Source of the DNA: Mytilus californianus
Lineage: Eukaryota
Length of the DNA stretch: 64,000 bases
Direction of reading: 5' to 3'
NCBI RefSeq assembly: GCF_021869535.1
Contig: NW_026262712.1
Coordinates: forward strand, 70,680,001-70,744,000
Position numbers and translations under genes: made by a program. Below, piece after piece: positions 28,401 through 47,827 of the stretch; the stretch's first letter is position 1; the number at the start of each line of letters is the position of its first letter. A model generated the notes under the pieces. It had not been told where the DNA came from. It made no database searches and saw only the letters and a program-made list of their open reading frames with translations.

Positions 28401-31400
28401 TTTTTTAAATGAACTAAACATAGTCTTCATTTTTTAATAATATTAACAAACTGATATAAACAGAAACTGCTTTGGTTTAGGAAACCCCGACAATCACACA
28501 GATAAAAAAATTGAAATCATGTCTTATCATTGATAATTTTTAATTTTTTTCTAGGTATTGTGTACGATTTTATTCCATGTACATTTACTCCATATCCTTT
28601 CATTTTCTACTTATCATGCTTATTGATGAGACAGTGCAATTTTGACTAAATACTCTGTGAATCTGCTTTCAAGCTGAGGACAAAAAAGTGTGATATGAAA
28701 AACAAGATGATGAGGACGACCTCGGACCATTTAAGACAACAGAAGTGATCCCTGTGCGTTGCCCTAGTTGGACATTGTCAGGTGACACAATAATAAGAAA
28801 TGGAAAAATTTTCAGATTACCTTCTAATTCTACATACCTCTACAGGAACATCTAAGAAAAGCTGAGGAAATTCATACATTACACCAACATTGTTTACTGT
28901 AATATAAAAAAAATATCAGATAATTTTCTTTATTATGAACATGAGAAGGAAGCTTTGTAATTCAATAGACTATGTGGCTGGGGAGTGGGGAACTGTTTAA
29001 TAAGATTCTCTATTGCTTTATTATTCAACATAATGCCTTTTTGGCATAATGGCAATTGGAGATTATAGACAAAATTATTTAAAAAAATAAGCTGTTTATT
29101 GATGCATGAGTCTGTGAGGAATGGATTTGAGGTTGATATAACTTGCATATTTGTCGAAAACTTAGTATTAAGATACCCAAGTAAGAGTAAGGAAATTAGT
29201 ACATTAAACACCTACTTTAGTCACTATAAAAGATTATATTTATAGTCCAGTTGCAAAGCCCCCCAATATTTCATTAATATTGAGGAAGAGAAGGAATTTG
29301 CAATGAAAAATCAAAGTATCATTGGTGCTGTGAGGCAGCCAACCTGACTTGAGCATCCATATATGAATTATTACAGTAAGTCTTTTCTTAACGAATGTTT
29401 CATTCAAAGCAGTTAATTATTAGTGAAGAAAAGAAAGAATATTGCTTATTAATTTTTTACGCATACCGGTAATCACTTCACAGTGCATGTGAGACCTCCA
29501 ACATGGAGCAAACAATCCATAGGCGGATCCAGGGGGGGCCCTGGGGGGCCCGGGCTCCCCCTTTCATGGGAAAAATTTGGTTGATTATATAGGGAATCAC
29601 TGAAGCATGACTGGAGCGTGCCCCCCTTAGGTCAGTCAGCGGGCCCCCCTTATGAAAAGTTCTGGATCCGCCACTGCAATCAGACCTCAATGCAAGTTCA
29701 AGACGGTCCCTTAAGCACCAGATTGAGTGGGACATGTGATAAAAACTTGCATTACAATTTGTTTCCTCCTTCAACACATGCCTTCTCATGAACAATAATA
29801 TTCTTTGTTTGAACATATAAGTCAAAAACTGTGTTAAATATTGTATCTGTTATTATTATACACAAACAAAGTTTCATACCTAGTATACCAATTTCTTTGT
29901 CTTTAATTTGATTCCAAATCTTCTCATAAATTTCTTTTCCATGAGCAAAATCAACAGCTATTGTACAGGTTTCCACTTTATATTGTTCTTCTAATTAAAT
30001 AGAACCATAACATCGTATAACAAATGTGTAATGAGAACTTGTCTAAAAACTTTAATGTATACAAAAATATCAAATATTGTTATCTTCCTAAACTAAATTC
30101 AAGTGACTAAAAAGGGTGCTAATTGTAAGAATATGGATTACTGCATAAAATTGAGAATAGAAATGGGGAATGTGTCAAAGAGACAACAACTGACCAAAGA
30201 GCAGAAAACTTATGCATGGTAAGTTTGAATTTCACTTCATCAATATATGTTTGTTACTGTAAATTCTGAAATTTTTGCGAAGTTTTATTTATTGTATAAA
30301 AATATGAAAACTTGAATTTCAAAAATTTTATTAGCAATATAAATCTGAAATCACAATAATTAATCTCACATTTGTAATTCTGATCTTTTATAAAGTAAAT
30401 ATATTTGATGACCATGATGACACTCAAAGGAACTCAGAGGCTGAGTTACTCCTTCCTCAAGTTAGGTTTGAATTGGTTCAGCCATTTTTAGAAGTCCAGT
30501 TTTCAAAATTCGACAAACCAGTAACTAGAATAGGCCATGATAATATAATGGTTGATGAATCAGCAGCAAAGAAACAATATTCCAAAAACTCCTTGTGACA
30601 TTTCATTCATTTTATTCTGCTTAAGGGCTATCAAGAAAATGATTAAAATGTGAATTGAGAAAGGACTTAATTCAGATTCCAAGAAATAGTGACAGCAATA
30701 CCTTATATGACTTTTGGCCCAATGAACTTAATATCGATTGGAATTATAGCCATGGGTTCTATTTTTTTTTATTAACTAATACAAACTAGTCTCTAGGATG
30801 AAACCAATGCCTATCTAATTTAAATTAGAACTTTATAGGAATCTCCTTTTCAGATATGTTGCAAAATTCAGTTTTAGTTAGATTGAAGTCAATGGCTACT
30901 TTTAGTTCATCTCAGCTTTCACATCTCTATTCTAATGACATAACTGGTGTCCTAAGGCCAATCTTCCTTTTTCAAAAGTGGCATTTTTTCTTAATCTTAT
31001 ACTGTTCATACAAACTTAAGATCTGCTTATACTTTATGAAACCAATGAAAAGTGGCAATGTTCCAAAACCACTTGAACAGGCTAGCATTAGAAATACTTG
31101 GGTAGATCTATTTAGCATATATACCTATATCTTTAGCTGCTCTGTATAACTTATTCTCTCCTCTACTTATCATAACAACATGTAATCCTCTACTGGCTAG
31201 TTCTTTGGCATAGGCTAATCCAATACCTTCACTACTACCTGTTACAACTGTAAAAATATATCATGTCACATGCTGATATCAATTGAATTAATAAAAACCA
31301 AAAGAGAAAAAAAATACAGCATTATTATATTCTTTTTGCTTATACAAACACGAATGTTTTTGGCAAGAAAAATACATGTAATTTGTAACCAGTTTTTTGT

Positions 31401-34400
31401 TAGAAAGTGTTTCAAGTCAGTGGCAAAAATTGGTGACAGTAAACATATTTTTTTTAATCTGGCTTTTGTCAAATACATGTAGGCAAGCATCCATGGCCGG
31501 ATATGTATAGATTATAGGGTATTCTACACCTTGATTTTGAAAAATGTCAGCTGTGAGCCACAATGTGAACCTTTTGGGGAGTGAGAATAGTGAACGAGCG
31601 AAAAATCTTCACACTATGTTGAGCGGCTGATATTTTACGATATCAATACCCAAAAGCCCTGATAATCTGTTTATCATGCTATTTCTAGTTTTTTCCCCCT
31701 CCCTTAGACAGTTTTACGCTTGTCCAGTTGATAATGTCTCAGACTCACCTTACATATTGTGACGTCACTGATAACTTCTGCTGAAGCATTGTGACATCAC
31801 TGATAAGTTTTGATCACATCTAAAGGCTGTGATACGAGAATAATGGAGCCATTAAGCGACGGATATAAGCAAAGGGAAGTACAAGAAAGTTTCCTATGAC
31901 AATCATGATTTCACCAACAAGCAATTTATACATTCTTTAGTTAAAATTTTCAAATCAGATTGATTTTTTGCTTTTTGGTTGCTAAAAATTGGATAAAAGG
32001 CCTCTGTATCACTTTGAAAGTTATCATGCTTTACATAGACAGAAGCCCATTTTGTCTGGTATTGAACATGTTGAACCAGTCTGCAATTGATATGAGGATG
32101 AACAGTAACATGAGTGAGAAAATTAATAAAACGAAAAATTAATATACTAATGAACTCAAAATTGTTAACTTTTTTGTCCTTTTTTCTTTTCTTTTCGCAA
32201 TTTGGTAAATCAAATTATTTATTGGTCAGCCATCTCTAATGAAACCAATAATGTAGAGTATCTCTCAAAGTTACTGATGGTTTTAAATGACATATCCAAC
32301 TAAGTAAGACATCACATGACTTTGGTGACATAGGAGAGCCGCCATTTTGTGTTATATTGCCCCATATAAAATGCATAGGTGCTTCAATAAAGTTCAATCT
32401 TCTCATTAATCTGACCCGTTTTCTAACTTTTGCAACTTAATCCTTGGTATTCCAACATAATTCTACCAAACAATGTTGGTTCTGACAGTTTAATTATTGA
32501 TTAAATTACGTCCCTGGACATTCGTAAATATCTCACTTTTTCTCATCATTTCCCAATTGACTCAATGCTAAATCTAGTGACCCCACGTCTACTTGTACTT
32601 TAAATTCACAAATTCCGTAAATAAAAGTAAAACTTTGCAACTCGATTGAGTATATCAAAACATATATCTGGCGAAGTATTCTACTTAAAATAGTTTAATT
32701 CGAGGGCAAATTATGTCCCACATCGATTTAAAAAAGTGATTTTTTCTGGATTTTTCAAAATGGCGGATGTGTTTGGGAGTGTTGCATGTATTTTTAATCA
32801 TCGTGTATTTTTCATGCAGAATCTGTGCTGTTTCTGTTATTTTTGTTGTTGTTGATATATTGATACGTTTGATTTCAAAATTTATTGATAAAAAAAAATT
32901 ATTTCAAGTGTGAAGTGAAACATAGCAGGGCAAAGTCAAAATAAATGGTCCAAATTTTAAATTTTTGACCAAATTTCAACATTGTTTCAGTGCACTTTCT
33001 TTTGTTGTATCTTGATACATATACATTTAAGTTAATAAATCCAAAAGGATATAAAAAAGTATAAAGAAAATAAAAAAGGTCTGAAACTTTATTGACATAA
33101 ACCAATAAATAAAATTTAAATCAAGTATACATTTTTGGAATATGATTTCAGACAAACAATATCAAATATTTATATTTTTTTCACCCCAATTGATTGCAGA
33201 GATCCAAACATTACTTTTGATGCAATGATTAATAATCTCCTCTTTGATTATCACTTTTTTTTTTATGTTTTTGGCTTTTTTTTTGTATCAATTCACTTAA
33301 AATTGATTGAAAAAGTTTTGATTAAAACATAAATCATTAATTAGTTGATAAAAAAACTTCTCCATATTAAAATGAACCCTTTTTTAAATTCACAGAGGAA
33401 AAAAACTGATTGATAAATCTTTTAATAAAGAAGATATATCAAAAAGAAAATACATCCACTTGTTGCACTCCTGACATATTATACACCAAACAAAAAATAC
33501 AGAAACTAGAACAAAATACTCATGATTTTTAAAAATTTGTAATCATTGCTGATTTATAAAGACCTAAATCTGTTATTTGAATGTTATTTCTATTTTAACT
33601 TATGCATCTTATGCACTTCAGTTCATATTTAAATTGATTTCTCTGACACATTATTATTAAAATCAGGTTAAGTTACCAAACAATGAACTAAATTCTATTA
33701 AATATTCAGCAGAATTGTTGTTTGACAAATTATAAAGAGATCTGCAATCTTCAAAGTTTTTCTGAACCATAATTTCTTTTTAAATTATTACCTATATAAG
33801 GTACTTTATTTCTCCTATTCTGTTGCACTCCTGACACTCAATATATATCATATCAAAACAGTTATACATCATCAAAATAGCCCATGATTTCTAGATGAAG
33901 TGTATATACCTTTCAGATTTAACGTTTTAATTTCATTTAAATAATATTTTTGAACTTTTTCATATCTATTACTTATTGTATACAGAAGTTCAAGTCTCAT
34001 CACATTACGCTACTATTTTTTTTTAAATGGCAGTCTTTGCTGTTTTAGAATGAGCTGAATTTTGTGGCTTGTTGTGTAGAATATTACTGCAAAATATCTT
34101 TGGAAAATCTCAAGTATTAAAAAAATGACGTTAAAAAAAGATGCCAAAATTGTCAGGAGTGCAACACTTTTTTGTGACATTTTGAAAAAAATACTTTTTA
34201 AAGACACAGCAAATTGTTGTCTGAAGATATGTGCCTTAAATTCTAATTTGCTTTACAACTATTATGTCTTAGTGATAATTTAAGCTCAGAATGAAGCTTT
34301 TCCATTAAACCATTTTGATACAAAAGTAGTGCCCTGTCAGGAGTGCAACACAAAAATTAGTACAACTGAGGAATAAATGATTTTGGAATATATGAATCAC

Positions 34401-37400
34401 ACTTAAACATAAACAAAAGTCAATCCTGTAAAAAAGATATGTCCTTTCCAGAATAAATACTTTATTAACCTGATTATTGATATAAATAATGTGTGATAGT
34501 CAAGTAAAAAAGGCTTCCCTATAAATGGTCAGGAGTGCAACTTTGAAGTTTAAAGACTCACACTTAATAAATACAAAAGCCAACATATTGTTCTGTTTTA
34601 TTTTTCAAAAGATACTATACTAGATAAAAGATTGCACCCAAAGAGTAGCCTGATAGACAAGGAATTTATCTTTCTGCACCATTTCTTTGATGTTTGGAGT
34701 GCAACAGTTTTAAAATGTTATTTTCTTGGACTTATATTTTAAGATAATATCAGCTCCTTATGACTTATTTGCCTTCAAATATGTTTTCTTGCTACTTAGG
34801 CTACATGTATGAGTTATAATAAATTCCTAAAGGTGAATTTCAAAGCAGGACTTTTCCAAAAATTATTGTTTGTCACAAGCAATTATATCTGAATGATGAA
34901 TTTTTATATAATTTTTGAATTTAGGAAACTAATTGTCATAAACTGTGTCTTTTGATAAGAAAATAACCATATTTCAATTTAAAAGTTTTATAATGGTTTC
35001 ATGTAATACTAATCAAATTATTATATCTGTAATAACAAACAATTAATTGTGTTGAACTCCTGACATGAATTTTCCATAACAAGCAGTTTTGCACATTTTG
35101 AGTTCAATTTTTATGATCCAACCTTTGAATGAATGAAAGATGGGAAAGATGGTTGTGAAACTGAACTTTAGAAGAAAATCAGACAGGCTAAGTGCATACA
35201 AACACACCATCAAAGTCAACAACAACTTCAATTTTGATGAGCAGAAAATTGAGAAAACTCTGAAAGAAGATCCACCTAAAGAAAACACTAGACAAGTATA
35301 AGCAAAGAAAACAAAACAATGTAAAATTAAATTACAAAGACTTAGACCTGAAGGCAAAAACACAGATGGAGAAAATGAAAAAAAACAAAACAGAGATTGG
35401 CAACAGAAGAGAAGAAGAAAATTGACACAAACCAAAAAAGTTGCAAACCAACAGAAAAATGTCCAGTCGAGAAGCAAAAGTACCGGTGCAGATACACTTT
35501 CTAGAAAAATCAGAAAGAGAAGACAAAGTATAAGGAAATTCTTCCTTCTTCAACCCAAACCTTGGCCTAAAACAATTGAATACCTTATATTCACAGCTAC
35601 ACCAAGGCAGTTGTAAGAGCTAATCAGTACTGATGGAAGTGTGCAAGAAATTGATGGGTGTCAAAGTGGAAACAAAGTTGAGAGACCCCTTAAGATCTGG
35701 AAACTGTTGAAAAGAAACTGGCATTTTCAAAAAGATAAGAAGGCTACCTGAAAAGTTTAGAACTAAGGGACTCTTTGAAAATGCCATTTTCTTTTCAACA
35801 GTTTTCAGATCTTTGAGGGGTTCCTCAACTTTGTTTATACTCAACATGTTCAAGACTCATCAATTTCGTGCACACAGCTGCCATCAGTTCTCATTAACTC
35901 GGACAACCACCTTGGTGTAGCTGTGCATGGATATGATGTGCTCAATTATTTTAGCCCAAGGTTTGGGATGGTCAGGAAGATAATGTCTTATTCTTTGACT
36001 TCTCTTTCTGATTTTTCTAGGTATTGTAACTGCATCTGTACTTCTGCTACTAGACTGGACAATTTTCTGCTGGTTTGCACCTTTTTTAGCTTGTGTCAAT
36101 TTTCTTCTTCTTTTCTGTTGCCACTTTCTCTGTTTTGTTTTCATTTTCTCATATGTGTTTTTAATTCTGGTCTATGTTTTTTGAATTTAGTTTTACATTG
36201 TTTTGTTTTCTTTGTACTTTCTTTGTTTATATTTGTCTAGTTTGTCCTTCAGATTTGGATCTTCTTTCAGTGTTTTTCTCAATTTTCTACTCCTCAAAGT
36301 TGAAGTTGTTGTTGACTTTGATGGTGTGTTTGTATGCACTTAGCCTGTCTGATTTTCTTCTAAAGTTCAGTTTCACAACCATCTTTCCCATCTTTCATTC
36401 ATTCAAAGGTTGGATCATAAAAATTGAACTCAAAATGTGCAAAACTGCATGTTATGGTAAATTCATGTCAGGAGTGCAACAAAATTAATTGTTTGTTATA
36501 ACAATTATAATAATTTAATTAGTATTACATGAAACCATTATAAAACTTTTAAACTGAAATATGGTTATTTCCTAATCAAAAGACAAAGTTTAAGACAATA
36601 AGCTTCCATAATTTGAAAATAATATGAAAATTCATCATTCAGATATTTTTGCTTGTGACAAAAAATAATTCTTGGATCAAAGTCCTGCTTTGAAATTCAC
36701 CTTTAGAAATTTATTATAACTCATACATGTAGCCTAAATAGTTAGAAAACATGTTTAGATGCAAATAAGTCATAAGGAGCTGATATTATCTTAAAATATA
36801 AGTCCAATAAAATAAAATTTTAAAACTGTTGCACTCCTGACATCAAAGAAATGGCTCAAAAAGATAAATTCCTTGTTTATCAGGCTACTCTTTGGATGCA
36901 ATCTTGTATCTAGTATAGTATCTTTTGAAAAATAAAACAGAACAATATGTTGGCTTTTGTATTTATTAGATGTGAGTCTTTAAACTTCAAAGTTGCACTC
37001 CTGACACTCATAGGGAGGCCTTATTTACTTGACTCTCACACATTATTTATACCAATAATCAGGTAAATGAAGTATTCATTCTGGAAAGGACAAATTTGTT
37101 TTACAGGATTGACTTTTGTTTATGTTCAGGTGTGATTCATTTATTAAAAAAACATTCTATTCCTCAGTAGTACTAATTTATGACAGGGCACTACTTTTTT
37201 TCAAAACACATCTGTATCAAAATGGTTTAATGGAAAAGCTTCATTCTAAGCTAAATTCATCACTAAGACATAATAGTTGTAAAACAAATTAGAATTTAAG
37301 GCACATACCTCCATACAACAATTTGCTGTGTCTTTAAAAAAAAGTATTTTTTCAAAATGTCACAAAAAAGTGTTGCACTCCTGACAATTTTGGCATCTTT

Positions 37401-38983
37401 TTTTAACATCATTTTTTTAATACTTGAGATTTTCCAAAGATATTTTGCAGTAATATTCTACACATCAAGCCACATTATTTGAAATTACTTTATTCAATCA
37501 AATGATCAGTATGATTGATAAATATTGCTTTATATGCAGGGAACCATTTATTTGGACTTTGCCCAGCAGGAAACATATATTTTGACAGATATATTGTTTC
37601 CAGAAAATAGTTAACACTGAAATTACAAATTTATTTGTAATAAAAAATTATTTTTCACTTTTTTGGGGTTTTTTTCCCCCTTTTCTGTATAATTTATTTT
37701 TATTTTCAAAAATATATAACTTTTTTATAGAAAAAAATGTTTTCGTCTCTAGAGAGAAAAAAATAATGCCCAACAAAAGATAAATGCTCTGTACCTTTTA
37801 AAGTTAATCCCTTGACGAACAGGTGAAGTCGAATTAAGGTTATAATGTTACATAACAACAAATTGTCAGGTAATGCAAAGGAATCGTGTCAAACCAAAAG
37901 CCACCAGGTGACATTAATATCCTTGAATACACATGTATTTCCAGAGTTAAGATTTTGTTATATATACAAACGTTGTAAGTGCACCAATAAATATTTTCTC
38001 TTTCCCGTGTACACACCTGAAGAAATATATACCATAAAGAACTTTAAGAAAAATGAATATTATGAAAAATTCTTCGATAAGTTGATTTTTGCTTAAAAAA
38101 AAATAAAATATTAATGTTACACGATAATTGTTTTGAAACAAATACTCTCATTCAAATTTTATATTTGATAGTTTTTTTTATTATTTTATAGAAAACGAGA
38201 CTTCATTGCATATGATTTTTGTCATTAATTTTTTTCAATTCAATATAAGCAAAATCCAGTATGTTCCAAATATTTAATTACAATCCAAATTCAGACCTGT
38301 ATCAAGCGCGAATATTGTGTCCATTTTTGCCCAGGCATTTAAACCGATATTGAAATTTTAACTTGTGTACAAAAACTTGTGATTGCATACATTTCAACAT
38401 GGTATACCCGCTCATATTTATCGACAGAGTTATTAGTCCTGAATAGGACTGATATAGTTGGGTATGTTGTGGTTTTTTGTATCATGTGTAATGTTATAAT
38501 TTGTTAATGTGAAAATACTTGAGACCTTGGTAATGAGATTCAAAATCATTTATTTGCAGTTTGAATTTTGCAAAAATCAGTATTTAATTAGTTATTTATA
38601 CGGACTTTGTCCTCTTTCTTGTTCTGAATATGCATGAAATATTTGCCACTGGACGCTAAGCAAATATCAATCAATCAATCATCTTTAACAGGTAATAACT
38701 ACCTCATCTTGAAAAAAAGCTTTAAAATATCAATTCAGACAAAACAAAACAAATTCTCTATATTTAAATTACCCGCCCATGCTCCAAAACGTTTTTTGTA
38801 ATTGCTGATATACGAAAGTTTGCTCAGGAGATGGTCGTTTGTTGCTTTTATCAATCCTATGAGACATTGTAGCGTTCGTTTACAAGCATAAAATACACCA
38901 ATAAATGCTAAAATATCTCTGGTATTTGTACATGTTCTTTCTAACTCTTTAAGGAGAAAGTCAAAGCTGTCAACTACCGCCAT
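16331..38983 (-). CDS. HSDL1: Hydroxysteroid dehydrogenase-like protein 1 (SDR family, HSD17B12/HSD17B3-related), 9 coding exons, 1047 nt, 348 aa
   Basis: Exons 38983-38773, 31247-31125, 29990-29880, 28896-28838, 27229-27185, 24644-24610, 22875-22794, 18981-18754, 16483-16331; all GT-AG with consistent phases. N-terminus [10 protein letters not shown] resembles vertebrate HSDL1 (MAAVDSF); TGxxxGIG, NNVG, YAATK, LQYEY...[29 protein letters not shown]. Confidence 0.93.
17065..17620 (-). mobile_element. Degenerate hAT-type transposase C-terminal (dimerisation) fragment in the last HSDL1 intron
   Basis: Frameshifted translation [21 protein letters not shown], then [11 protein letters not shown]...[13 protein letters not shown], resembling the hAT dimerisation consensus (LxLPHSxAxxERxFS). 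Confidence 0.55.
18754..18981 (-). CDS. HSDL1: HSDL1 exon 8 ([14 protein letters not shown]...GYWPHTIQ)
   Basis: Lies within ORF 18658-18990; CAG/GT, phase 0/0. Confidence 0.95.
19140..19420 (-). repeat. Representative copy of a very abundant interspersed repeat (AAGAAGATGTGGTATGAGTGCCAATGAGACAACTCTCC end motif)
   Basis: Related copies near 4655-4930, 15010-15210, 17790-17960, 39800-39890, 44950-45030, 50340-50460, 54858-54995, 57710-57760. Confidence 0.7.
20719..21559 (+). mobile_element. HINE/Helentron-like (pearl-type) non-autonomous element carrying a tandem array of five units (four ~161 bp, one 127 bp)
   Basis: Units start near 20721, 20848, 21009, 21170, 21331, followed by a (GGAC/ACAC)-like microsatellite and the terminal stem-loop GTCCCCCGC...GCAGGGGAC plus an A-run. 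Confidence 0.7.
22794..22875 (-). CDS. HSDL1: HSDL1 exon 7 ([27 protein letters not shown])
   Basis: Catalytic Ser region and YxxxK motif; TAG/GT, phase 2/0. Confidence 0.93.
22965..24290 (+). mobile_element. HINE-like element, family B: 5' module plus six ~161-bp tandem units, GAC microsatellite and terminal palindrome
   Basis: 5' module GCTCCGCTGGGCGCAGCTTGATACGAC...; CCCCAAAATCAATCCC marker recurs near 23305, 23460, 23620, 23781, 23943, 24103; ends GACGACGTCGACAACGACGACG...ATACGACC. Confidence 0.7.
24610..24644 (-). CDS. HSDL1: HSDL1 exon 6 ([12 protein letters not shown])
   Basis: CAG acceptor, GTTAG donor, phase 0/2. Confidence 0.88.
24845..25930 (+). mobile_element. Second, more degraded copy of HINE-like family B
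   Basis: Same 5' module at 24845-25020 and ~161-bp units at 25470-25880. Inverted fragments of the 5' module also occur near 38255-38330 and 56520-56640. Confidence 0.65.
26080..27080. repeat. Degenerate tandem repeat (~120-140 bp units) interrupted by an unrelated insertion at ~26560-26870
   Basis: CTTGACATATGG...ATGTGTCTCTTATTGTAG...ATGTTGACATCAAG recurs near 26089, 26230, 26359, 26481, 26891, 27035. Confidence 0.7.
27185..27229 (-). CDS. HSDL1: HSDL1 exon 5 ([15 protein letters not shown])
   Basis: Matches the KLWDIINVNIAAA region of HSDL1; CAG/GT, phase 0/0. Confidence 0.9.
28838..28896 (-). CDS. HSDL1: HSDL1 exon 4 ([20 protein letters not shown])
   Basis: NNVG motif; CAG acceptor, GTATG donor. 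Confidence 0.92.
29518..29676. mobile_element. MITE with GGCGGATCC terminal inverted repeats
   Basis: CATAGGCGGATCCA...TGGATCCGCCACTG flanked by CAATC on both sides. An inverted sister copy lies at 40986-41194. Confidence 0.7.
29880..29990 (-). CDS. HSDL1: HSDL1 exon 3 ([15 protein letters not shown]...KEIGIL)
   Basis: TAG acceptor, GTATG donor, phase 1/1. Confidence 0.92.
31125..31247 (-). CDS. HSDL1: HSDL1 exon 2 ([21 protein letters not shown]...KDI)
   Basis: Rossmann TGxxxGIG motif; CAG acceptor, GTAT donor. Confidence 0.93.
34063..37474. mobile_element. Foldback-like giant inverted repeat: arms ~34063-35613 and ~35904-37474, spacer ~290 bp
   Basis: Arms are reverse complements along their whole length (e.g. 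34063 TGTGGCTTGTTGTGTAGAATATTACTGC vs 37445-37474); the internal motif TGTCAGGAGTGCAAC is mirrored; mirror-image ORFs appear in the track (35043-35477 vs 36174-36488). Confidence 0.9.
38773..38983 (-). CDS. HSDL1: HSDL1 exon 1 (MAVVDSF...RFGAWA)
   Basis: ATG at 38983, donor GTAAT at 38772, phase 1. Confidence 0.9.
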
Positions 38984-40124: not shown

Positions 40125-40295
40125 TAATAAATATATGCAAATACAATAACTGATATTAAATAAATATATGCAAATACAATAACTGATATTAAATAAATAT
40201 ATGCAAATACAATAACTGATATTAAATAAATATATGCAAATACAATAACTTATAAATTTATATATGCAAATACAATAACTGATAAATAAATACAT
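40125..40295. repeat. 33-bp AT-rich minisatellite, ~5 copies
   Basis: ATGCAAATACAATAACTGATATTAAATAAATAT at 40135, 40168, 40201, 40234, and a shorter copy at 40264. Confidence 0.9.
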
Positions 40296-40985
40296 ATATA
40301 TAATGCATATATAACATGTAAAATGATAAATGAATGCATCCGAGAAGAATAATGACCTATATTAAGTATTGGATACTATAAAAAGTCTGTTCTACGTTTG
40401 AAAACACAGAAAAGAAATTTACAAAGGTTATGGTCAGATCATATGTTTTCGTACTATACATGCTTTTCCAAAGGAAATTGTGAGGTCAAAATGAATTCTG
40501 TCAATTCTGATCAATAGCACGAAAATCCATGAGACGAGGATACATACAATGTCATATGTCTTTTACATTTTCTGAGCTCAACAACTGTACATGTTTAAAT
40601 GCATGACGATGGACGCCTATAATAATATGGCTAACTAAGAATTGCAAGACTAAGAACACACAGCTGCTGATAGCGAGGATCAGTCATTGATAGACATACT
40701 AAATCTAGACCGAAGAGAACTTTTTTATTTACATGTACACAAAGGGAGATTATAACCATGCAGATGAAAGAAGACACAACACATTTTTCTACATATTATT
40801 TCTTAAATTGACACACAATCGACCAGAGCAGGAAATTTGAAATTGATAAAACAAAATACTAATGCATTATGTAAATAAATCAATAGCCTGAAAATAGACA
40901 AACAATGGATACCACCTCATCAGATAAAACATGAAAATAGCCAAAACCGACAGCGAGGATGCTTTAGCTTTAAACCAACAGTTTC

Positions 40986-41639: not shown

Positions 41640-43345
41640 AACACATCATTTGTTCAAACCTTGTGCAACACTTTGAAGACCAAAACATAATCAACAACAG
41701 ACAGCACTATGGCAAGCCGTTTTAATCTTTATTCTAACTTCATATATCTTATATAATCCAGTTTTTATAAACTGGTCAAACTACAAGCATTTCCAAAAAG
41801 AATGCAAAAGACAAGTCCGAAAGGCTGAATGGGAATACATCAACAACACCATAATGGAAAGACTGGAAAACGCTATCCTGGAATACAACAATCCAAAGCC
41901 TTTTTGGAAATACATAAAATCGAGAAAACAAGACAACATAGGAGTATCACCGTTGAAAAGCAATGGCCATTTAGTGAATGGCAGTAAAGGGAAGGCAGAA
42001 CTACTGATACAACATTCAAATCAGTATTCACAAGAGACAACGACAAACACTGCCTAAAACATCAAAACACATAAAGAACTCAATCCCAATCCTCGAAATA
42101 AAACATAAAGGTGTCGAAAAACTGCTCAGACAACTTAATCCATTAAAAGCATCAGGACCAGACGGTATACCAAACAGAATCCTCAAGGAAGGCTCTAAAC
42201 AACTAGCACAGAAAATTACAGACCGGTATCACTAACATCTGTGCCGTGTAAAATACTAGAACACATCATCTGTAAGCACATGCTAAACCACCTAGACAAG
42301 CACAGCTAGGGTACTAACATTACTTAACCATGGATTCAGATCCGGGTACTCGTGTGAAACACAGCTACTAGTCACACTGCACGACTTCATGAAATCACAC
42401 GATGCTGGTAACCAAGTTGATGTTGCTATCCGGCCTGGACTTTTCAAAAGTATTTGACACCGTGCCACATAACAAATTATTACACAAACCTGATGAATAT
42501 GGTGTGAGAGGACCACTGAATAAATGGCTCGAAATGTTTCTCACTCAGAGAAATATGAAGGTTGTCATTGGTGGAGAGGAATCTGAAGAAGCTACAGTGG
42601 ACTCAGGAACCGTACTCGGACCCCTTCTTTTCCTCTGTCATATCAACGACCTACCAGATGCAGTAAAATCAACCGTTAGACTTTTTGCTGATGATTGTCT
42701 GCTATTCAGAAATATAAAAACACAACATGACCACACTCTATTACAACAAGATCTGGTGAGCCTAGAAAAATGGGCCAAAGACTGGGGTATGCGCTTTAAC
42801 GCAAAGAAATGTTACATCCTGAGCATTAAGAACAAAAGCCAGAAATGCTATGCCCTCGATGGACACATACTCCAACAAGTCCAACACAATCCATACTTGG
42901 GGATACCGATATATATCAGAAGATCTAAAATGGACCACCCACGTTTCAAATGTAGCCAAGAAAGCAAATTCGACACTAGGCTTTCTAAGACGCAACCGAA
43001 GATTCTGCCCAAAAGACTGCAAGAAAACAGCATACATCTCATTGGTAAGATCTACGATGGAATATGGGGCAATTGTATGGGACCCATATACAACAAACAA
43101 CATCAACCAATTAGAAAGGATCCAGCGAAGAGCAGCGCGATTCATCACAGGGGATTACAAATCTAGAGAAGAAGGATTGGTCACCAAAATGCTTACCGTA
43201 CTGGAACTAGAAAACCTGCAGTCTAGAAGAACAGGCCAAAGACTGGTATTTCTGTACAAAGTGGTTGAGGGTTTGGTCCCAGCTATCAAACCTGACATTT
43301 TTTGGTAAAGAGCAAAACCAAAAGGCTTATCAAACCGAAATGTTT
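41640..43345 (+). mobile_element. Decayed non-LTR retrotransposon ORF2/RT fragment (CR1/L2-type group)
   Basis: Frameshifted motifs KASGPDGIP, YRPVSLTSVPCKILEHII, HGFRSGYSCETQL, LDFSKVFDTVPH, GTVLGPLLFL.HINDLP, LFADDCLL, LVRSTMEYGAIVWDPY, LERIQRRAARF. Confidence 0.88.
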
Positions 43346-44850: not shown

Positions 44851-45861
44851 GTATGAGATACATTGTTAACGATAAAAATAACTCATAAGATGCTGAGATC
44901 AATGATCAGACTATAAAATCGGTATAAATGTACTATATATATGATAGTTGTTAATTTCTGTGTCATTTGGGCTCTTGTGGAGAGTTGTCTCATTGGCAAT
45001 CATACCACATTTTCTTATTTTTATATGTTTTCTGTTAATCTAATTAAAATACAGGTCATGTGATGATGTGTGATTAACAGCATGTACAAGCAAAGCGTGG
45101 ACACAGCATCTATATTTAATCAGATTGCTTTTCTGTTGTCTATTTAATACGTCATCGCCGTTATCAATTTGGTGTACGTTGAAAATGGAACCGACACGAT
45201 GGTGTTTAAAAATGGTTTTATCTCATTGTGCTGCAATGATCACCTTTATACTTTGATTATAGTTCAGGTAAATGGAAGTTTCTGGAAGTACACTTGTTAT
45301 GATTCATTGTGAATTTTAATTCATAAGTACTAACAAAAAGATCGTGTGACCTACATTTTATGATTCAATAATGGTTAAACTATATAAAACTACAGGCTAT
45401 ATTAAAGTTTAATATCAAGTCTGAATCAGTTAAAATGGGAATAATTTCAACTAATAACACGAAATGTGCGTCAACTTTCAGAAATAATGCAGGCTTCTTA
45501 TATAGATTCAGATTCTTTATTTCTTATAAAACCAAGTTAATTTAATGGTACAAAGAAAGACATTTTTACATATAATTGCATACAGATTCTGCGCATGACA
45601 AGTTTGTACAAAACGAGCATAAAAAGATGAGTGATCGATGATCAACCTGGAGAACATACTTCTATATTGATAATTCTGATTAATTTACACAAATTTTTCA
45701 ATACCCGAATATTTGTTGAAACAAATAAACTGCCGAATTTCAAAACATTTACTCGACTTACATAGTAAGGTTTAAGAAAAGCTCTTATAGAAAGTGTTTG
45801 GTTGGCACTCGGTCTGATAAAGAGATAAGGCCGATTTTCCATGTAATTGTTTGCAGGCTAT

Positions 45862-46040
45862 TTCTTTCACTCACAGGGTGGAAATCTGAAGTATTTGTTT
45901 CACTCACAGGGTGGAAATCTGAGGTATTTGTTTCACTCACAGGGTGGAAATCTGAAGTATTTGCTTCACTCACAGGGTGGAAATCTGAAGTATTTGTTTC
46001 ACTCACAGGGTGGAAATCTAAGTATTTGTTTCACTCACAG
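45862..46040. repeat. 33-bp minisatellite, ~5.5 copies
   Basis: CACTCACAGGGTGGAAATCTGAAGTATTTGTTT at 45868, 45901, 45934, 45967, 46000, and a partial copy at 46032. Confidence 0.92.
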
Positions 46041-47827
46041 CTAGGAAATCTAAAATTCTTCTAGAAACAGAATATTGAACTTTATATCATATACATGTAC
46101 TTTAACTATTTGGCAACGATTTTATAAATTTGCATTATAAACCAAAACTCTATTCAGCAGTACATGTTGCTGATGTAGGCATTTTGATACAAATTGCAAA
46201 TTTTAAAATTACATGTTTTATTCAAATGATGCACCCTATGACATCACTAACTAAAATTAATTAATGTGTATCCCAAAAACAAGACATAGCTTTACTACCG
46301 ACAGGAATTTGGATTGAGTCAACGAAATCCTGCCTATATACTTTTTGGATAAATATTCTAATTTTTTTTTTAAATCTGTCAAAATTTCGGTTTTGAACAA
46401 TTATCTGGCGGTAATAATTAGGTGTTCTGATTTGTTTATAATGTGCCATTATATTATTAAAACCTTAAAGTAGACACAGTCAGTTGTGATGAGTGTGAAT
46501 TTAAGTAAAGATTGGGGCACGTTTTGAAAGTTGCCCTGGTGTGAAACAAATCCACGGGAAAATAAGTCCTCTGTTTTCATATAGTATGACCCCAAGGGTT
46601 GACTGGGGAAAAACAATAAAGTCATATCTGGATATCTTGCTAAAGTGGGGTACCGGTGTCCGTTTGGCTGTGCAGAATGTAAAAATAAGCAACCACGTCC
46701 AGTCGGAATGGGGACTTATCATTTTTTTTATACGATGTCTTCAGTAGGATGAGTGCGATCTCTGCACGTTAGTTAACTAATCTTCACAACATTTTTCTAA
46801 TGTGTCCGGGCCTGTTGCATGCAACATATCCGCTTCTTTTAAATATCCTATCATTTTCAAGGTGCTACAAGTGCCAAAGTTGTCCAACCCTTATCCCGAT
46901 CAACCTTTTTGAATATGCATGACATATTTGCCACTGGACGTTCAGCTATCACTCAATCGTGTAGCCTGCTACTATCTAGATTAGTGGAATAACAAATGGC
47001 TCAAAGAAAATCACACAAACAAAACCTGATTTCGAGAAAGCTCATAACCCAATAATATCAGTATTACGATAAACAACACTGTAAACACAGTTAAATGTAA
47101 AACTACACATGTTGTATGTAATAACATCCTCATGAATACAAATACGAATGTAGAAATAATTTTCTACAAAACAGGGGTTGGATGACAAACGGCTGCATCA
47201 AAAGGTGAAGATATAGGAATTTGCTTGAAGGAAATCTGCAATAGTTTTATGATGTAGACCCATTTTGACTATTCTTTTTTTTACATAATAAGCAGCCAGT
47301 TTAATTGTAACTTTTACTTAGTAAAGTAGATTTGTATGTTTCGGAGTTTAGTGTGGCGTTAATTTCGATGAAATTGTTTACATTATTGTAAAGTGCCCAG
47401 CTGAAACCCGCCTCCGGGTGCGGGATTTTCTCGCTGCGTTGAAGACCCATTGGTTGCCTTTGGATGTGTTCTGCTCCTAGGTCTAGTCGTTGTCTCTTTG
47501 ACACATTCCCCGTTCCCATTCTATATTCTATTACGCGTCATAACGTTTTTCTCAGGGTGATGTGTACTGTAAATGTCTAGTGATGAGTTTTCCATATATG
47601 ACCCTAGCAGAGATATACCTGGTAAAACATATTCACGAAAAGATCCATAAACTATATTTATTTGTATATGTATTATTTAGTTTTGCAATTTTCAGTAAAG
47701 CAGACTTTTACAAGTATAATTATAATCTAGTTAAATTAAAAAGAAAATTTACATGATACTCTTAATTGTTCCAATGCATATGAAACTTCACTGTTTGAAT
47801 GTTGTCAATACATGCATAAACAAATCT

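What the first reader, a model, noticed from the sequence alone, without database searches (positions are those of the whole stretch)
34063..37474. 3.4-kb foldback palindrome in HSDL1 intron 1, built from two inward-facing copies of a coding-like element end
Seen: ~1.55-kb arms (roughly 85-95% identical by eye, more diverged towards the centre) separated by ~290 bp. The inner parts carry a decayed Lys/Arg-rich reading frame (...[12 protein letters not shown]...PKPWPKTIE...TATPR) pointing inward from both sides. Inference: a Foldback-type element formed by duplicating one end of a long-TIR DNA transposon. The HSDL1 pre-mRNA would fold into >1 kb of dsRNA (a substrate for ADAR editing or endo-siRNA), and the DNA could form cruciforms. 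The family is not recognisable to me.
Basis: partly seen in the sequence, partly recalled or inferred. Interest (0 to 1): 0.72.

Follow-up and report, generated by a model that had tools for sequence, protein, structure and literature searches.

The report
Hairpin-bodied Sola2 transposon in mussel intron
The 3.4-kb mirror-image stretch is real, but it is the inner part of a 4.6-kb gene-less jumping element of a mussel (about 33 copies). The element replaced its own transposase gene with a back-to-back copy of that gene's start, which is an ordinary kind of transposon derivative with an unusual hairpin body.

Summary
The palindrome is real. Its arms are 34063-35731 and 35774-37474, they are about 88-90% identical, and the loop is 42 nt rather than ~290 nt. 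It is not a Foldback element and it is not the ends of anything.

It lies inside a 4,637-bp cut-and-paste transposon (window 32928-37564). That element has 24-bp terminal inverted repeats (GGGCAAAGTC...) and 4-bp target duplications (AGCA here). It has about 33 copies in this 1.65-Gb mussel genome.

In every full copy checked, an A-type arm sits next to a 1,135-bp left part and a B-type arm sits next to a 90-bp right tail. A tree of 38 arms separates A from B at 100/100 support, with mirrored subfamilies. The inverted duplication therefore arose once, before the family amplified.

Each arm holds about 1.08 kb of upstream DNA with five copies of a conserved 15-bp motif, followed by the decayed first ~210 codons of a transposase. 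An old single-armed relative (L052) runs from the arm straight into the rest of that gene. Its catalytic motifs match published Sola2 sequences.

Two copies differ by only 9 of 4,708 bases, so the family moved recently. No matching autonomous element is in the assembly.

The central 1.4 kb is predicted to fold as one long RNA hairpin. The one RNA run I could lay gave essentially no reads. The host gene context (intron 1 of an HSDL1-like gene, minus strand) holds.

The parts
32924..32927 (.). Left copy of the 4-bp target-site duplication (AGCA).
   Evidence: The same 4 bases follow the element at 37565-37568. 14 of 17 copies with both ends in hand have perfect 4-bp duplications of differing sequence.
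32928..32951 (+). Left terminal inverted repeat, 24 bp, starting GGGCAAAGTC.
   Evidence: Homology among copies begins exactly here. The 21-mer occurs 33 times forward and 33 times reverse in the genome, against 1+1 for the control.
32928..34062 (+). 1,135-bp non-palindromic left part. It is the presumed 3' region of the parent element and carries two copies of the 15-bp motif (33462-33476 and 33822-33836).
   Evidence: It is present next to the A arm in about 30 copies and nowhere else. The motif positions match those of the non-palindromic sister element L051.
34063..35731 (+). A arm: the inverted duplicate of the parent's 5' region. It carries four forward motifs (34151, 34335, 34527, 34691), one reverse motif (35051), and then the decayed transposase start.
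   Evidence: The A arms of 19 copies form one side of the tree at 100/100 support.
35140..35736 (+). Decayed transposase codons 1 to ~209 in the A arm. It starts [10 protein letters not shown] and ends around IFTATPR.
   Evidence: tblastn of P0001, P0003 and P0006 onto the element gives E values down to 7e-6 for this arm. BLASTP of the same frame from another copy against P0001 gives E 9e-9. Most copies carry in-frame stops.
35732..35773 (.). 42-nt unpaired centre (loop) of the palindrome.
   Evidence: It is the gap between the two ends of the arm alignment. It forms the hairpin tip in the RNA fold.
35774..37474 (-). B arm: the native 5' region of the parent element. It is contiguous with the right tail and TIR. 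Its motifs lie at 36466, 36828, 36992 and 37372, and the partner of 34335 is deleted in this copy.
   Evidence: The distances of its motifs from the right end (192, 572 and 736 bp; ~364-380 bp where this copy has lost the fourth motif) match the sister element's 191, 368 and 558 bp. The B arms form the other side of the tree.
35758..36391 (-). Decayed transposase codons 1 to ~212 in the B arm.
   Evidence: tblastn places P0003 residues 1-16 at 36391-36344 and residues 37-212 at 36288-35758, E 3e-13. BLASTP of this frame from another copy against P0001 gives 55% identity over 33 aa, E 3e-11.
37475..37564 (-). 90-bp right tail. It ends in the right TIR (37541-37564; one A-to-C change in this copy).
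   Evidence: The tail is conserved in all copies, and homology ends at 37564.
37565..37568 (.). Right copy of the target-site duplication (AGCA).
38760..38983 (-). Exon 1 of the host HSDL1-like gene. It starts [11 protein letters not shown] and ends near ...RFGAW.
   Evidence: It is the ORF at 38735-38983 on the minus strand. Its likeness to the human HSDL1 N-terminus rests on my recollection. The 3' limit of the exon is approximate.
31111..31260 (-). Exon 2 of the host gene, carrying the TGxxxGIG dinucleotide-binding motif.
   Evidence: Pfam adh_short, E 5.5e-9. The element therefore lies in the ~7.5-kb first intron.

Best explanation
**What it is.** Window 32928-37564 is one copy of a non-autonomous cut-and-paste DNA transposon family of the Sola2 group, with about 33 copies in this mussel genome.

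**What the parent looked like.** The parent element carried these parts in order:
- a short TIR;
- about 1.17 kb of upstream DNA with repeated copies of a 15-bp motif (TGTCAGGAGTGCAAC);
- a transposase gene;
- a 3' region of about 1.1 kb with more motif copies;
- the other TIR.

**How the derivative arose.** In one ancestor, everything beyond about codon 210 of the transposase gene was lost. It was replaced by an inverted copy of the first ~1.7 kb, starting 90 bp inside the end. This gave the 3.4-kb internal palindrome.

**Shown here.** The single origin, the homology of the arms to the transposase start, the true ends and target duplications, and recent mobility.

**Inferred.**
- The rearrangement arose by strand-switching during repair or replication of the element (abortive gap repair or fold-back priming).
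- The element is moved in trans by a Sola2 transposase that recognises the TIRs and probably the 15-bp motifs.
- The hairpin is a by-product rather than a selected function. Any transcript through it, such as the HSDL1 pre-mRNA, should still form a long imperfect duplex that matches the 5' end of the parent's transposase mRNA.
For: **True ends.** Homology among copies runs from 32928 to 37564 and stops there, and the flanks beyond are unrelated. The TIR 21-mer occurs 66 times in the genome, all in this family.

**Target duplications.** 14 of 17 copies have perfect 4-bp duplications. 8 of 14 are A-N-N-T against 1.6 expected (p = 4.5e-5). This fits the AT-rich AWWT duplications reported for Sola2-type elements (PMC3627910).

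**Single origin.** The IQ-TREE of 38 arms puts A and B on opposite sides at 100/100 support. The two halves have near-identical topology: the same subfamilies and sister pairs.

**Arms are the transposase 5' end.**
- P0003 starts MGKMIIKLPAIRKS; the arms start [14 protein letters not shown].
- tblastn places residues 1 to ~210 on both arms, and BLASTP gives E 3e-11 and 9e-9.
- L052, an ~80% identical single arm, continues into transposase residues ~224-732.

**Sola2 assignment.** L053 and P0001 read DFSEN..QDEIE..HW..QVTI(N/H)P, ISDSLTHD, FSDNCAAQYKNK and ESGHGKG. The published Sola2-1_HM and sea-urchin Sola2 rows read DFAENY..Q(D/Q)EIQS.HW, a 2nd-Asp block (FISDDITHD / FITADVKHD), (T/S)DG.A.QYK and SHG (PMC3985635 supplement). 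The Sola1 and Sola3 rows in the same file differ.

**B arm is the native copy.** The non-palindromic sister element L051 (TSD TCAA) has all six motifs in one orientation. They lie at the same distances from both ends as in this element's left part and B arm.

**The motif is constrained.** 2 of 75 motif columns vary among the four consensuses, against 294 of 1,641 elsewhere (p = 1.2e-4).

**Recent mobility.** Two copies with different flanks and target duplications differ by 9 of 4,708 bp.
Against: - No transposase-bearing element with this TIR was found, and no transposase more than 52% identical to the L052 gene. The mobilising enzyme is therefore unidentified, and the Sola2 assignment rests on relatives rather than on this family's own gene.
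- I could not find the ends of the nearest coding relative, L053.
- The repair mechanism proposed for the duplication leaves no checkable footprint after this much divergence.
- The excess divergence near the centre (2, 7, 8, 10, 20, 34 early fixed differences per 280-bp bin from the outer end to the centre) is not explained by simple neutral decay of once-identical arms.
Confidence: 0.85

Rival explanations
1. The hairpin is functional. The element acts as a mobile, Mu killer-like silencer. Read-through or convergent transcription of the arms would give dsRNA matching the promoter-proximal part and first ~210 codons of the parent's transposase mRNA, and small RNAs from it would shut down the autonomous Sola2 parent.
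For: [quoted passage not shown]
- This copy sits in an intron of an expressed-type gene.
- The predicted hairpin is -856 kcal/mol, and the arms share 18 perfect runs of 21 bp or more.
- No intact parent survives in the assembly.
Against: - There is no RNA evidence: 11 partial reads in about 10 million read from one RNA-seq run. No small-RNA data could be examined.
- The arms drifted apart by 7.5-11.5% without obvious maintenance of pairing.
- The family was still transposing very recently, which suggests the transposase was not silenced.
Confidence: 0.15
2. The inverted copy persists because it helps transposition. It doubles the array of 15-bp binding motifs and makes the element's two halves symmetric, so the rearranged derivative would out-compete plain deletion derivatives for transposase.
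For: - The motif is conserved against an 18% variable background, and across family-level divergence (the variant TGTCAGGAGTGTGAC lies at the same offsets from the ATG in L053).
- The palindromic form has about 33 copies, while the non-palindromic sister has one.
Against: - Constraint is clear only for the native B-arm motifs: 0 changes against 4.4 expected, p = 0.012. In the A arm it is weak: 2 changes against 5.7 expected, p = 0.08.
- Copy number alone does not show an advantage.
- No binding data exist for any Sola2 transposase, as far as I know.
Confidence: 0.2
3. It is a Foldback-type or long-TIR element whose 1.7-kb arms are its functional termini.
For: The large inverted arms have repeated subterminal motifs. 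The palindrome ends TGTGG...CCACA, which resembles TG...CA termini.
Against: - In all 20 other full copies examined, the same 1,135-bp and 90-bp sequences flank the palindrome.
- There is no duplication at 34063/37474 (ATTT on one side, TCAT or TTAT on the other).
- The palindrome is never found without those flanks.
- The target duplications lie at the outer TIRs.
Confidence: 0.02
4. It is an assembly artefact: a chimeric foldback join made by the assembler or by library chimeras.
For: Palindromes are a known artefact class in long-read assemblies. I had no long reads to span this locus.
Against: - More than 25 dispersed loci have the same structure but individual substitutions, deletions and nested insertions.
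- The arms differ by 10-12%.
- The A and B halves of the arm tree mirror each other.
- Independent short-read contigs from three studies cross the loop.
Confidence: 0.01

Closest known systems
Sola2 DNA transposons (Sola superfamily; Bao et al. 2009, as cited in PMC3627910 and PMC10741241)
   Same: - 4-bp AT-rich target duplications with an A..T bias.
- Short TIRs.
- The transposase relatives L052, L053 and P0001 carry the Sola2 catalytic blocks shown in the PMC3985635 supplement.
   Different: - This family has lost the catalytic part of the gene.
- Its body is a 3.4-kb palindrome.
- I did not find a repeated 15-bp subterminal motif described in the Sola papers I could read.
- The original Sola paper was not available to me.
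Mu killer of maize (PMC3440606)
   Same: It is an inverted duplication of the 5' part of an autonomous transposon's transposase gene. It is placed where read-through transcription from a host gene can produce a multi-kilobase hairpin RNA.
   Different: - Mu killer is a single immobile locus that includes the TIR in both arms, and it has demonstrated silencing activity.
- Here the duplication excludes the TIR.
- Here the structure keeps both element ends and has itself multiplied to about 33 copies.
- No silencing or small RNA is shown here.
Foldback (FB) elements of Drosophila and similar long-inverted-repeat elements, including the satellite-armed foldback noted elsewhere in this genome (s1-287930)
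   Same: Kilobase-scale inverted arms with internally repeated short motifs, and hairpin or cruciform potential.
   Different: - In FB elements the arms are the termini and are built of tandem repeats.
- Here the arms are internal, and they are unique sequence plus a gene fragment.
- Here transposition uses separate short TIRs.
Rearranged internal-deletion derivatives of cut-and-paste elements (Ds, non-autonomous P elements), ascribed to abortive gap repair with template switching (my own knowledge, not checked here)
   Same: Loss of the transposase core with both ends retained. New junctions and duplicated or inverted internal segments. Mobilisation in trans.
   Different: - The inverted segment is unusually long (1.7 kb).
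- It was formed once and then carried through the whole amplification of the family.

Membership tests
Sola2 (Sola superfamily) DNA transposon | 4-bp target-site duplications, AT-rich (AWWT-like). | tested here: met
   14 of 17 copies have perfect 4-bp duplications. A is at position 1 in 11 of 14, and T is at position 4 in 10 of 14. A..T occurs in 8 of 14 against 1.6 expected. The sister element has TCAA. The reference statement is in PMC3627910.
Sola2 (Sola superfamily) DNA transposon | Terminal inverted repeats. | tested here: met
   24-bp TIRs, 22 of 24 matching in this copy, at the exact limits of inter-copy homology.
Sola2 (Sola superfamily) DNA transposon | DDD transposase with the Sola2-specific conserved blocks. 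| tested here: inconclusive
   This family keeps only codons 1 to ~210, which precede the catalytic domain. These codons are homologous to the N-termini of proteins whose catalytic blocks match the Sola2 rows of the PMC3985635 supplement and not the Sola1 or Sola3 rows. The old relative L052 links the arm to such a gene. The match to the Sola2 rows was made by eye on published alignment rows, not by a scored search.
Foldback-type element | The long inverted arms form the ends of the mobile unit and are flanked by the target duplication. | tested here: not met
   Conserved non-palindromic sequence extends 1,135 bp and 90 bp beyond the arms in every copy. The target duplications lie at the outer TIRs.
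Ginger1/Ginger2 | TGTNR termini with CCGG (Ginger1) or RTATAY (Ginger2) target duplications, and an integrase-type transposase. | tested here: not met
   The element's ends are GGGCA...TGCCC, and its duplications are 4-bp and AT-rich. The palindrome's TGTGG ends have no duplication. The criteria come from PMC2836005.
piggyBac / Kolobok | TTAA-specific target duplication. | tested here: not met
   Only 1 of 14 duplications is TTAA.
Mu killer-like hairpin silencer | A hairpin transcript, and small RNAs that silence the autonomous parent. | not testable with these tools
   Only the structure is met. One RNA-seq run gave 11 partial reads, and no small-RNA data were available.

The most novel reading that the evidence does not exclude
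A self-propagating silencer. This would be a non-autonomous Sola2 element whose body is a hairpin of its parent's promoter region and first ~210 codons. Each new insertion into a transcribed intron, as here in HSDL1, would add another source of dsRNA against the parent's transposase. That could explain why no intact parent remains in this assembly while the hairpin element has about 33 copies.
Probability: 0.12. Interest if true: 0.65.

Novelty: new member of a known kind. Interest (0 to 1): 0.33.

Why it matters
- **Annotation.** The report turns an unclassified "foldback" into a defined Sola2 non-autonomous family with exact ends, target preference and subfamilies. The same applies to about 33 other loci in this genome.
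- **Sola2 biology.** It points to a 15-bp motif kept at fixed offsets from the ends and from the transposase ATG across diverged mussel Sola2 lineages. That makes it a concrete candidate binding site for a superfamily with no biochemistry that I know of.
- **Palindrome evolution.** The family is a natural series of about 33 dated copies of one long palindrome. It could be used to study arm-to-arm conversion, central decay and deletion in an animal genome.
- **Hairpin RNA.** If the hairpin is transcribed, it is a ready test case for dsRNA editing or small-RNA production from intronic transposons in bivalves.

Tried and rejected
- **Autonomous partner by TIR.** I searched the 21-mer with 2 mismatches, the inner 19-mer, and a degenerate 20-mer. 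These found only this family plus one sister element (L051).
- **Autonomous partner by peptide.** The arm peptides hit only family copies.
- **Ends of the coding relative L053.** I found no convincing TIR pair within 14.9 kb, and the only other copy in the genome is interrupted.
- **Pfam on the transposase.** No family matched. The DUF7869 lead from the protein atlas gave many unrelated hits in the genome and none at these loci. No paper mentions it.
- **Ginger, considered for the TGTGG...CCACA palindrome ends.** Rejected on target duplication and flanks.
- **Long open frames on the T-rich strand of the arms (up to 185 aa).** Rejected as composition artefacts of a purine-rich region (AT skew about 0.4).
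- **Consensus reading frames of the arms.** These are still broken. Consensus sequences were used only for divergence statistics.
- **Empty-site evidence from reads.** The joints near 32917 to 37572 have 21-nt sides, extra letters and multi-copy depth. They come from paralogues of the repeat the element landed in, so they are not a clean empty allele.
- **The original Sola paper and Yuan & Wessler 2011.** Neither could be read.
Full report
**1. Observation**

The inverted repeat is real and lies at the coordinates given. The repeat finder returns nine collinear inverted pairs between 34058 and 37479. BLAST of the left half against the reverse complement of the right half gives one alignment, 34063-35731 against 37474-35774. 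It has 87.9% identity over 1,714 columns with 36 gap openings.

A global alignment has 1,487 matches, 164 mismatches and 68 gap columns. The longest perfect run is 149 bp (35084-35232), and 18 runs are 21 bp or longer.

The unpaired centre is 42 nt, not ~290 bp. The arms are 1,669 and 1,701 bp. The inner part is purine-rich on the inward strand, with AT skew about +0.4.

**2. The palindrome is internal to a larger mobile element**

A search of the window's own genome (1.65 Gb, 175 contigs) with the left arm found 85 matches. Most are pairs of opposed arms about 42 nt apart at more than 25 loci.

I fetched 20 full copies with 300-bp flanks. The sequence outside the palindrome was conserved too. 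Comparing the window with all loci showed that homology runs from 32928 to 37564 and stops there.

The ends are 24-bp inverted repeats starting GGGCAAAGTC. The sequence beyond them differs at every locus.

Of 17 copies with both ends in hand, 14 have perfect 4-bp target duplications of differing sequence; the window copy has AGCA. Eight of those 14 are A-N-N-T, against 1.6 expected from base composition (p = 4.5e-5).

The TIR 21-mer occurs 33 times forward and 33 times reverse, against 1+1 for the control, and all the clean matches belong to this family. The 1,135-bp left part is found only next to A arms.

The unit is therefore 4,637 bp:
- left TIR plus the 1,135-bp left part;
- A arm;
- 42-nt loop;
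- B arm;
- 90-bp tail ending in the right TIR.

**3. One origin, before amplification**

In every full copy checked, one arm type (A) adjoins the left part and the other (B) adjoins the tail. A maximum-likelihood tree of 38 arms from 19 copies puts all A arms on one side and all B arms on the other, at 100/100 support. Two rearranged copies, L033 and L048, were left out. The same two subfamilies and the same sister pairs appear in both halves.

The inverted duplication therefore happened once in an ancestor, and the arms then evolved as parts of one lineage.

Arm divergence between consensuses is 7.5% in subfamily 1 (which includes the window copy) and 11.5% in subfamily 2. Terminal branches are 0.05-2%.

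Two copies on contig C154 have unrelated flanks and different duplications (ATTT and ATGT). They differ by 9 of 4,708 bases, and their homology is confined to the element. That indicates very recent transposition.

Several copies carry nested insertions or asymmetric deletions in one arm (L032, L033, L035, L039, L048). One search also lists shorter derivatives.

**4. What the arms are**

Each arm holds five copies of a 15-bp motif, TGTCAGGAGTGCAAC. Four are in one orientation at 164-200 bp spacing, and one is reversed. An ATG follows 89 bp after the reversed copy. The left part holds two more copies. The motif occurs 294 times in the genome against 0 for the control, almost all in this family.

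One outlier led to L051, a 2,325-bp non-palindromic sister element:
- It has a related 27-bp TIR and the duplication TCAA.
- It has six motif copies, all in one orientation.
- They lie at the same distances from its two ends as the motifs of this element's left part and B arm.

The B arm with the tail is therefore the native arrangement, and the A arm is the inverted duplicate.

Among the four subfamily and arm consensuses, 2 of 75 motif columns vary against 294 of 1,641 others (p = 1.2e-4). The constraint is clear for the B arm and weak for the A arm.

**5. The coding-like frames are the start of a Sola2 transposase**

An old, ~80% identical single arm (L052) is followed directly by open frames with transposase-like motifs.

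The nearest relative in the genome is L053, at 49% amino-acid identity. It has a 631-codon open frame and an OTU-protease frame downstream. It carries the motif variant TGTCAGGAGTGTGAC at the same offsets from the ATG (-90, -440 and -601, against -89, -434 and -598 here) and again downstream of the gene.

Full-length database relatives of 750-900 aa come from bivalves. They begin MKKLVVKLPF (P0001) or MGKMIIKLPAIRKS (P0003), where the arms begin [14 protein letters not shown].

tblastn places residues 1 to ~210 of these proteins on both arms (E down to 3e-13). It places residues 93-732 on L052, running past the point that corresponds to the palindrome centre. BLASTP of arm frames from other copies against P0001 gives E 3e-11 and 9e-9.

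The frames are broken in most copies and in the consensuses. The long open frames on the opposite, T-rich strand are composition artefacts.

Pfam has no model for this transposase. The alignment rows published by Majorek et al. (PMC3985635, supplement file 5) allow a by-eye comparison:
- **Sola2-1_HM and a sea-urchin Sola2 protein:** DFAENY..Q(D/Q)EIQS(Y/A)HW..(S/T)(L/I)HP, a 2nd-Asp block (FISDDITHD / FITADVKHD), (T/S)DG.A.QYK and S(H/C)(G/H).
- **P0001 and L053:** DFSEN..QDEIE(S/F)(A/T)HW..VTI(H/N)P, ISDSLTHD, FSDNCAAQYKNK and ESGHGKG.
- **Sola1 and Sola3 rows:** clearly different.

Sola2-type elements are reported to make AT-rich 4-bp (AWWT) duplications (PMC3627910), which agrees with section 2. 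I therefore file the family as a non-autonomous Sola2 derivative. The caveat is that the catalytic evidence comes from relatives and from a comparison by eye.

**6. How it most likely arose and works**

Shown: the parent's transposase gene beyond about codon 210 is gone and is replaced by an inverted copy of the first ~1.7 kb, starting 90 bp inside the end. Both TIRs are kept. The family has multiplied and moved recently.

Inferred: a strand switch during repair or replication of the element (fold-back priming or abortive gap repair) made the inverted duplication. A Sola2 transposase supplied in trans moves the element, recognising the TIRs and probably the 15-bp motifs.

The enzyme is not identified. 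No transposase more than 52% identical to the L052 gene is in the assembly, and no other element shares the TIR. The source may be a diverged Sola2 element, or a parent absent from this assembly.

**7. Arm evolution**

Differences fixed between A and B before the subfamily split number 2, 7, 8, 10, 20 and 34 per 280-bp bin, from the outer end to the centre. Later lineage-specific changes are flat along the arm.

Thirteen columns show both arms changing together between subfamilies, against 1.4 expected, and 12 of them lie in the outer two thirds. This points to occasional arm-to-arm conversion that fades towards the centre. An alternative is early selection for a de-symmetrised centre. I could not separate the two.

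**8. RNA and reads**

The central 1,411 nt fold as a single hairpin of -856 kcal/mol.

From one RNA-seq run, about 10 million reads (6% of the run) gave 11 reads. Most were 90-95% alike and only partly fitting. Expression, editing and small RNAs are therefore untested rather than excluded.

DNA contigs from three other studies, one under a second species label, cover the family and cross the loop. One contig matches the right junction of this very locus exactly (X2 record 8).

The joints near 32917 to 37572 have short sides, extra letters and multi-copy depth. They come from paralogues of the repeat in which the element landed, and they are not a clean empty site.

**9. Context**

The host gene is on the minus strand. 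Exon 1 is the ORF at 38735-38983, starting [11 protein letters not shown]. By my recollection this resembles the HSDL1 N-terminus. Exon 2 is at 31260-31111 ([10 protein letters not shown], Pfam adh_short E 5.5e-9). The element fills 4.6 kb of the ~7.5-kb first intron.

Earlier notes of this scan call the genome a mussel, the California mussel. They mention other Sola-like transposons and a satellite-armed foldback element in it. I used these only as leads.

**10. Verdict**

It is wrong on the type, because the element is not Foldback, the parent was not long-TIR, and the arms are not the termini.

This is a new family of a known kind. Three points are of modest interest: the conserved 15-bp motif, the single-origin palindrome carried through the amplification, and the untested Mu killer-like possibility (PMC3440606).

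Noticed in passing
L051:3139-5463 (G000 C24:51108838-51111162): A 2,325-bp non-palindromic sister element. It has a 27-bp TIR (GGGTSAAYTCAAAATAAATGAGGCACA), the 4-bp duplication TCAA, and six copies of the same 15-bp motif, all in one orientation. It appears to be single-copy.
   Followed up: partly
L052:1538-5200 (G000 C154:80640037-80643700): An old, degenerate, progenitor-type copy. A single arm (~80% identical) runs straight into a frameshifted Sola2-like transposase gene. No TIR or left part was found nearby.
   Followed up: partly
L053:4335-7868 (G000 C24:5337334-5340867): A Sola2-like transposase gene with a 631-codon open frame, 92% identical to database protein P0001. An OTU cysteine-protease frame follows it (Pfam E 7e-8). 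The motif variant TGTCAGGAGTGTGAC lies upstream and downstream. I could not find its ends, and the only other copy, on C94, is interrupted.
   Followed up: partly
window 32500-32927 and 37565-38000: The element landed inside another repeat. The flanks have multi-copy depth in three DNA runs, and contigs from paralogues join the two flanks with diverged filler.
   Followed up: no
window 42402-43308 (+): Reverse-transcriptase open frames of a retroelement (Pfam RVT_1, E 9e-19), about 3.4 kb upstream of the HSDL1-like exon 1.
   Followed up: partly
window 40126-40299 and 45859-46051: Two 33-bp tandem arrays with 5.3 and 5.9 copies, at 92% and 94% matches.
   Followed up: no
window 32928-32951 / 37541-37564: The reverse complement of the TIR (GGACCATTTATTTTGAC) matches 15 of 16 bases at the start of the insect Sola1_NA TIR listed in PMC3845634. 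It lies in the opposite orientation relative to the terminus. This may be chance or a shared binding site.
   Followed up: no
window 37565 (X6 record 15): A single-copy-depth contig from another individual starts exactly at the element's right boundary. It then continues for about 100 nt that do not fit the element. This may be a different or empty allele at this intron.
   Followed up: no
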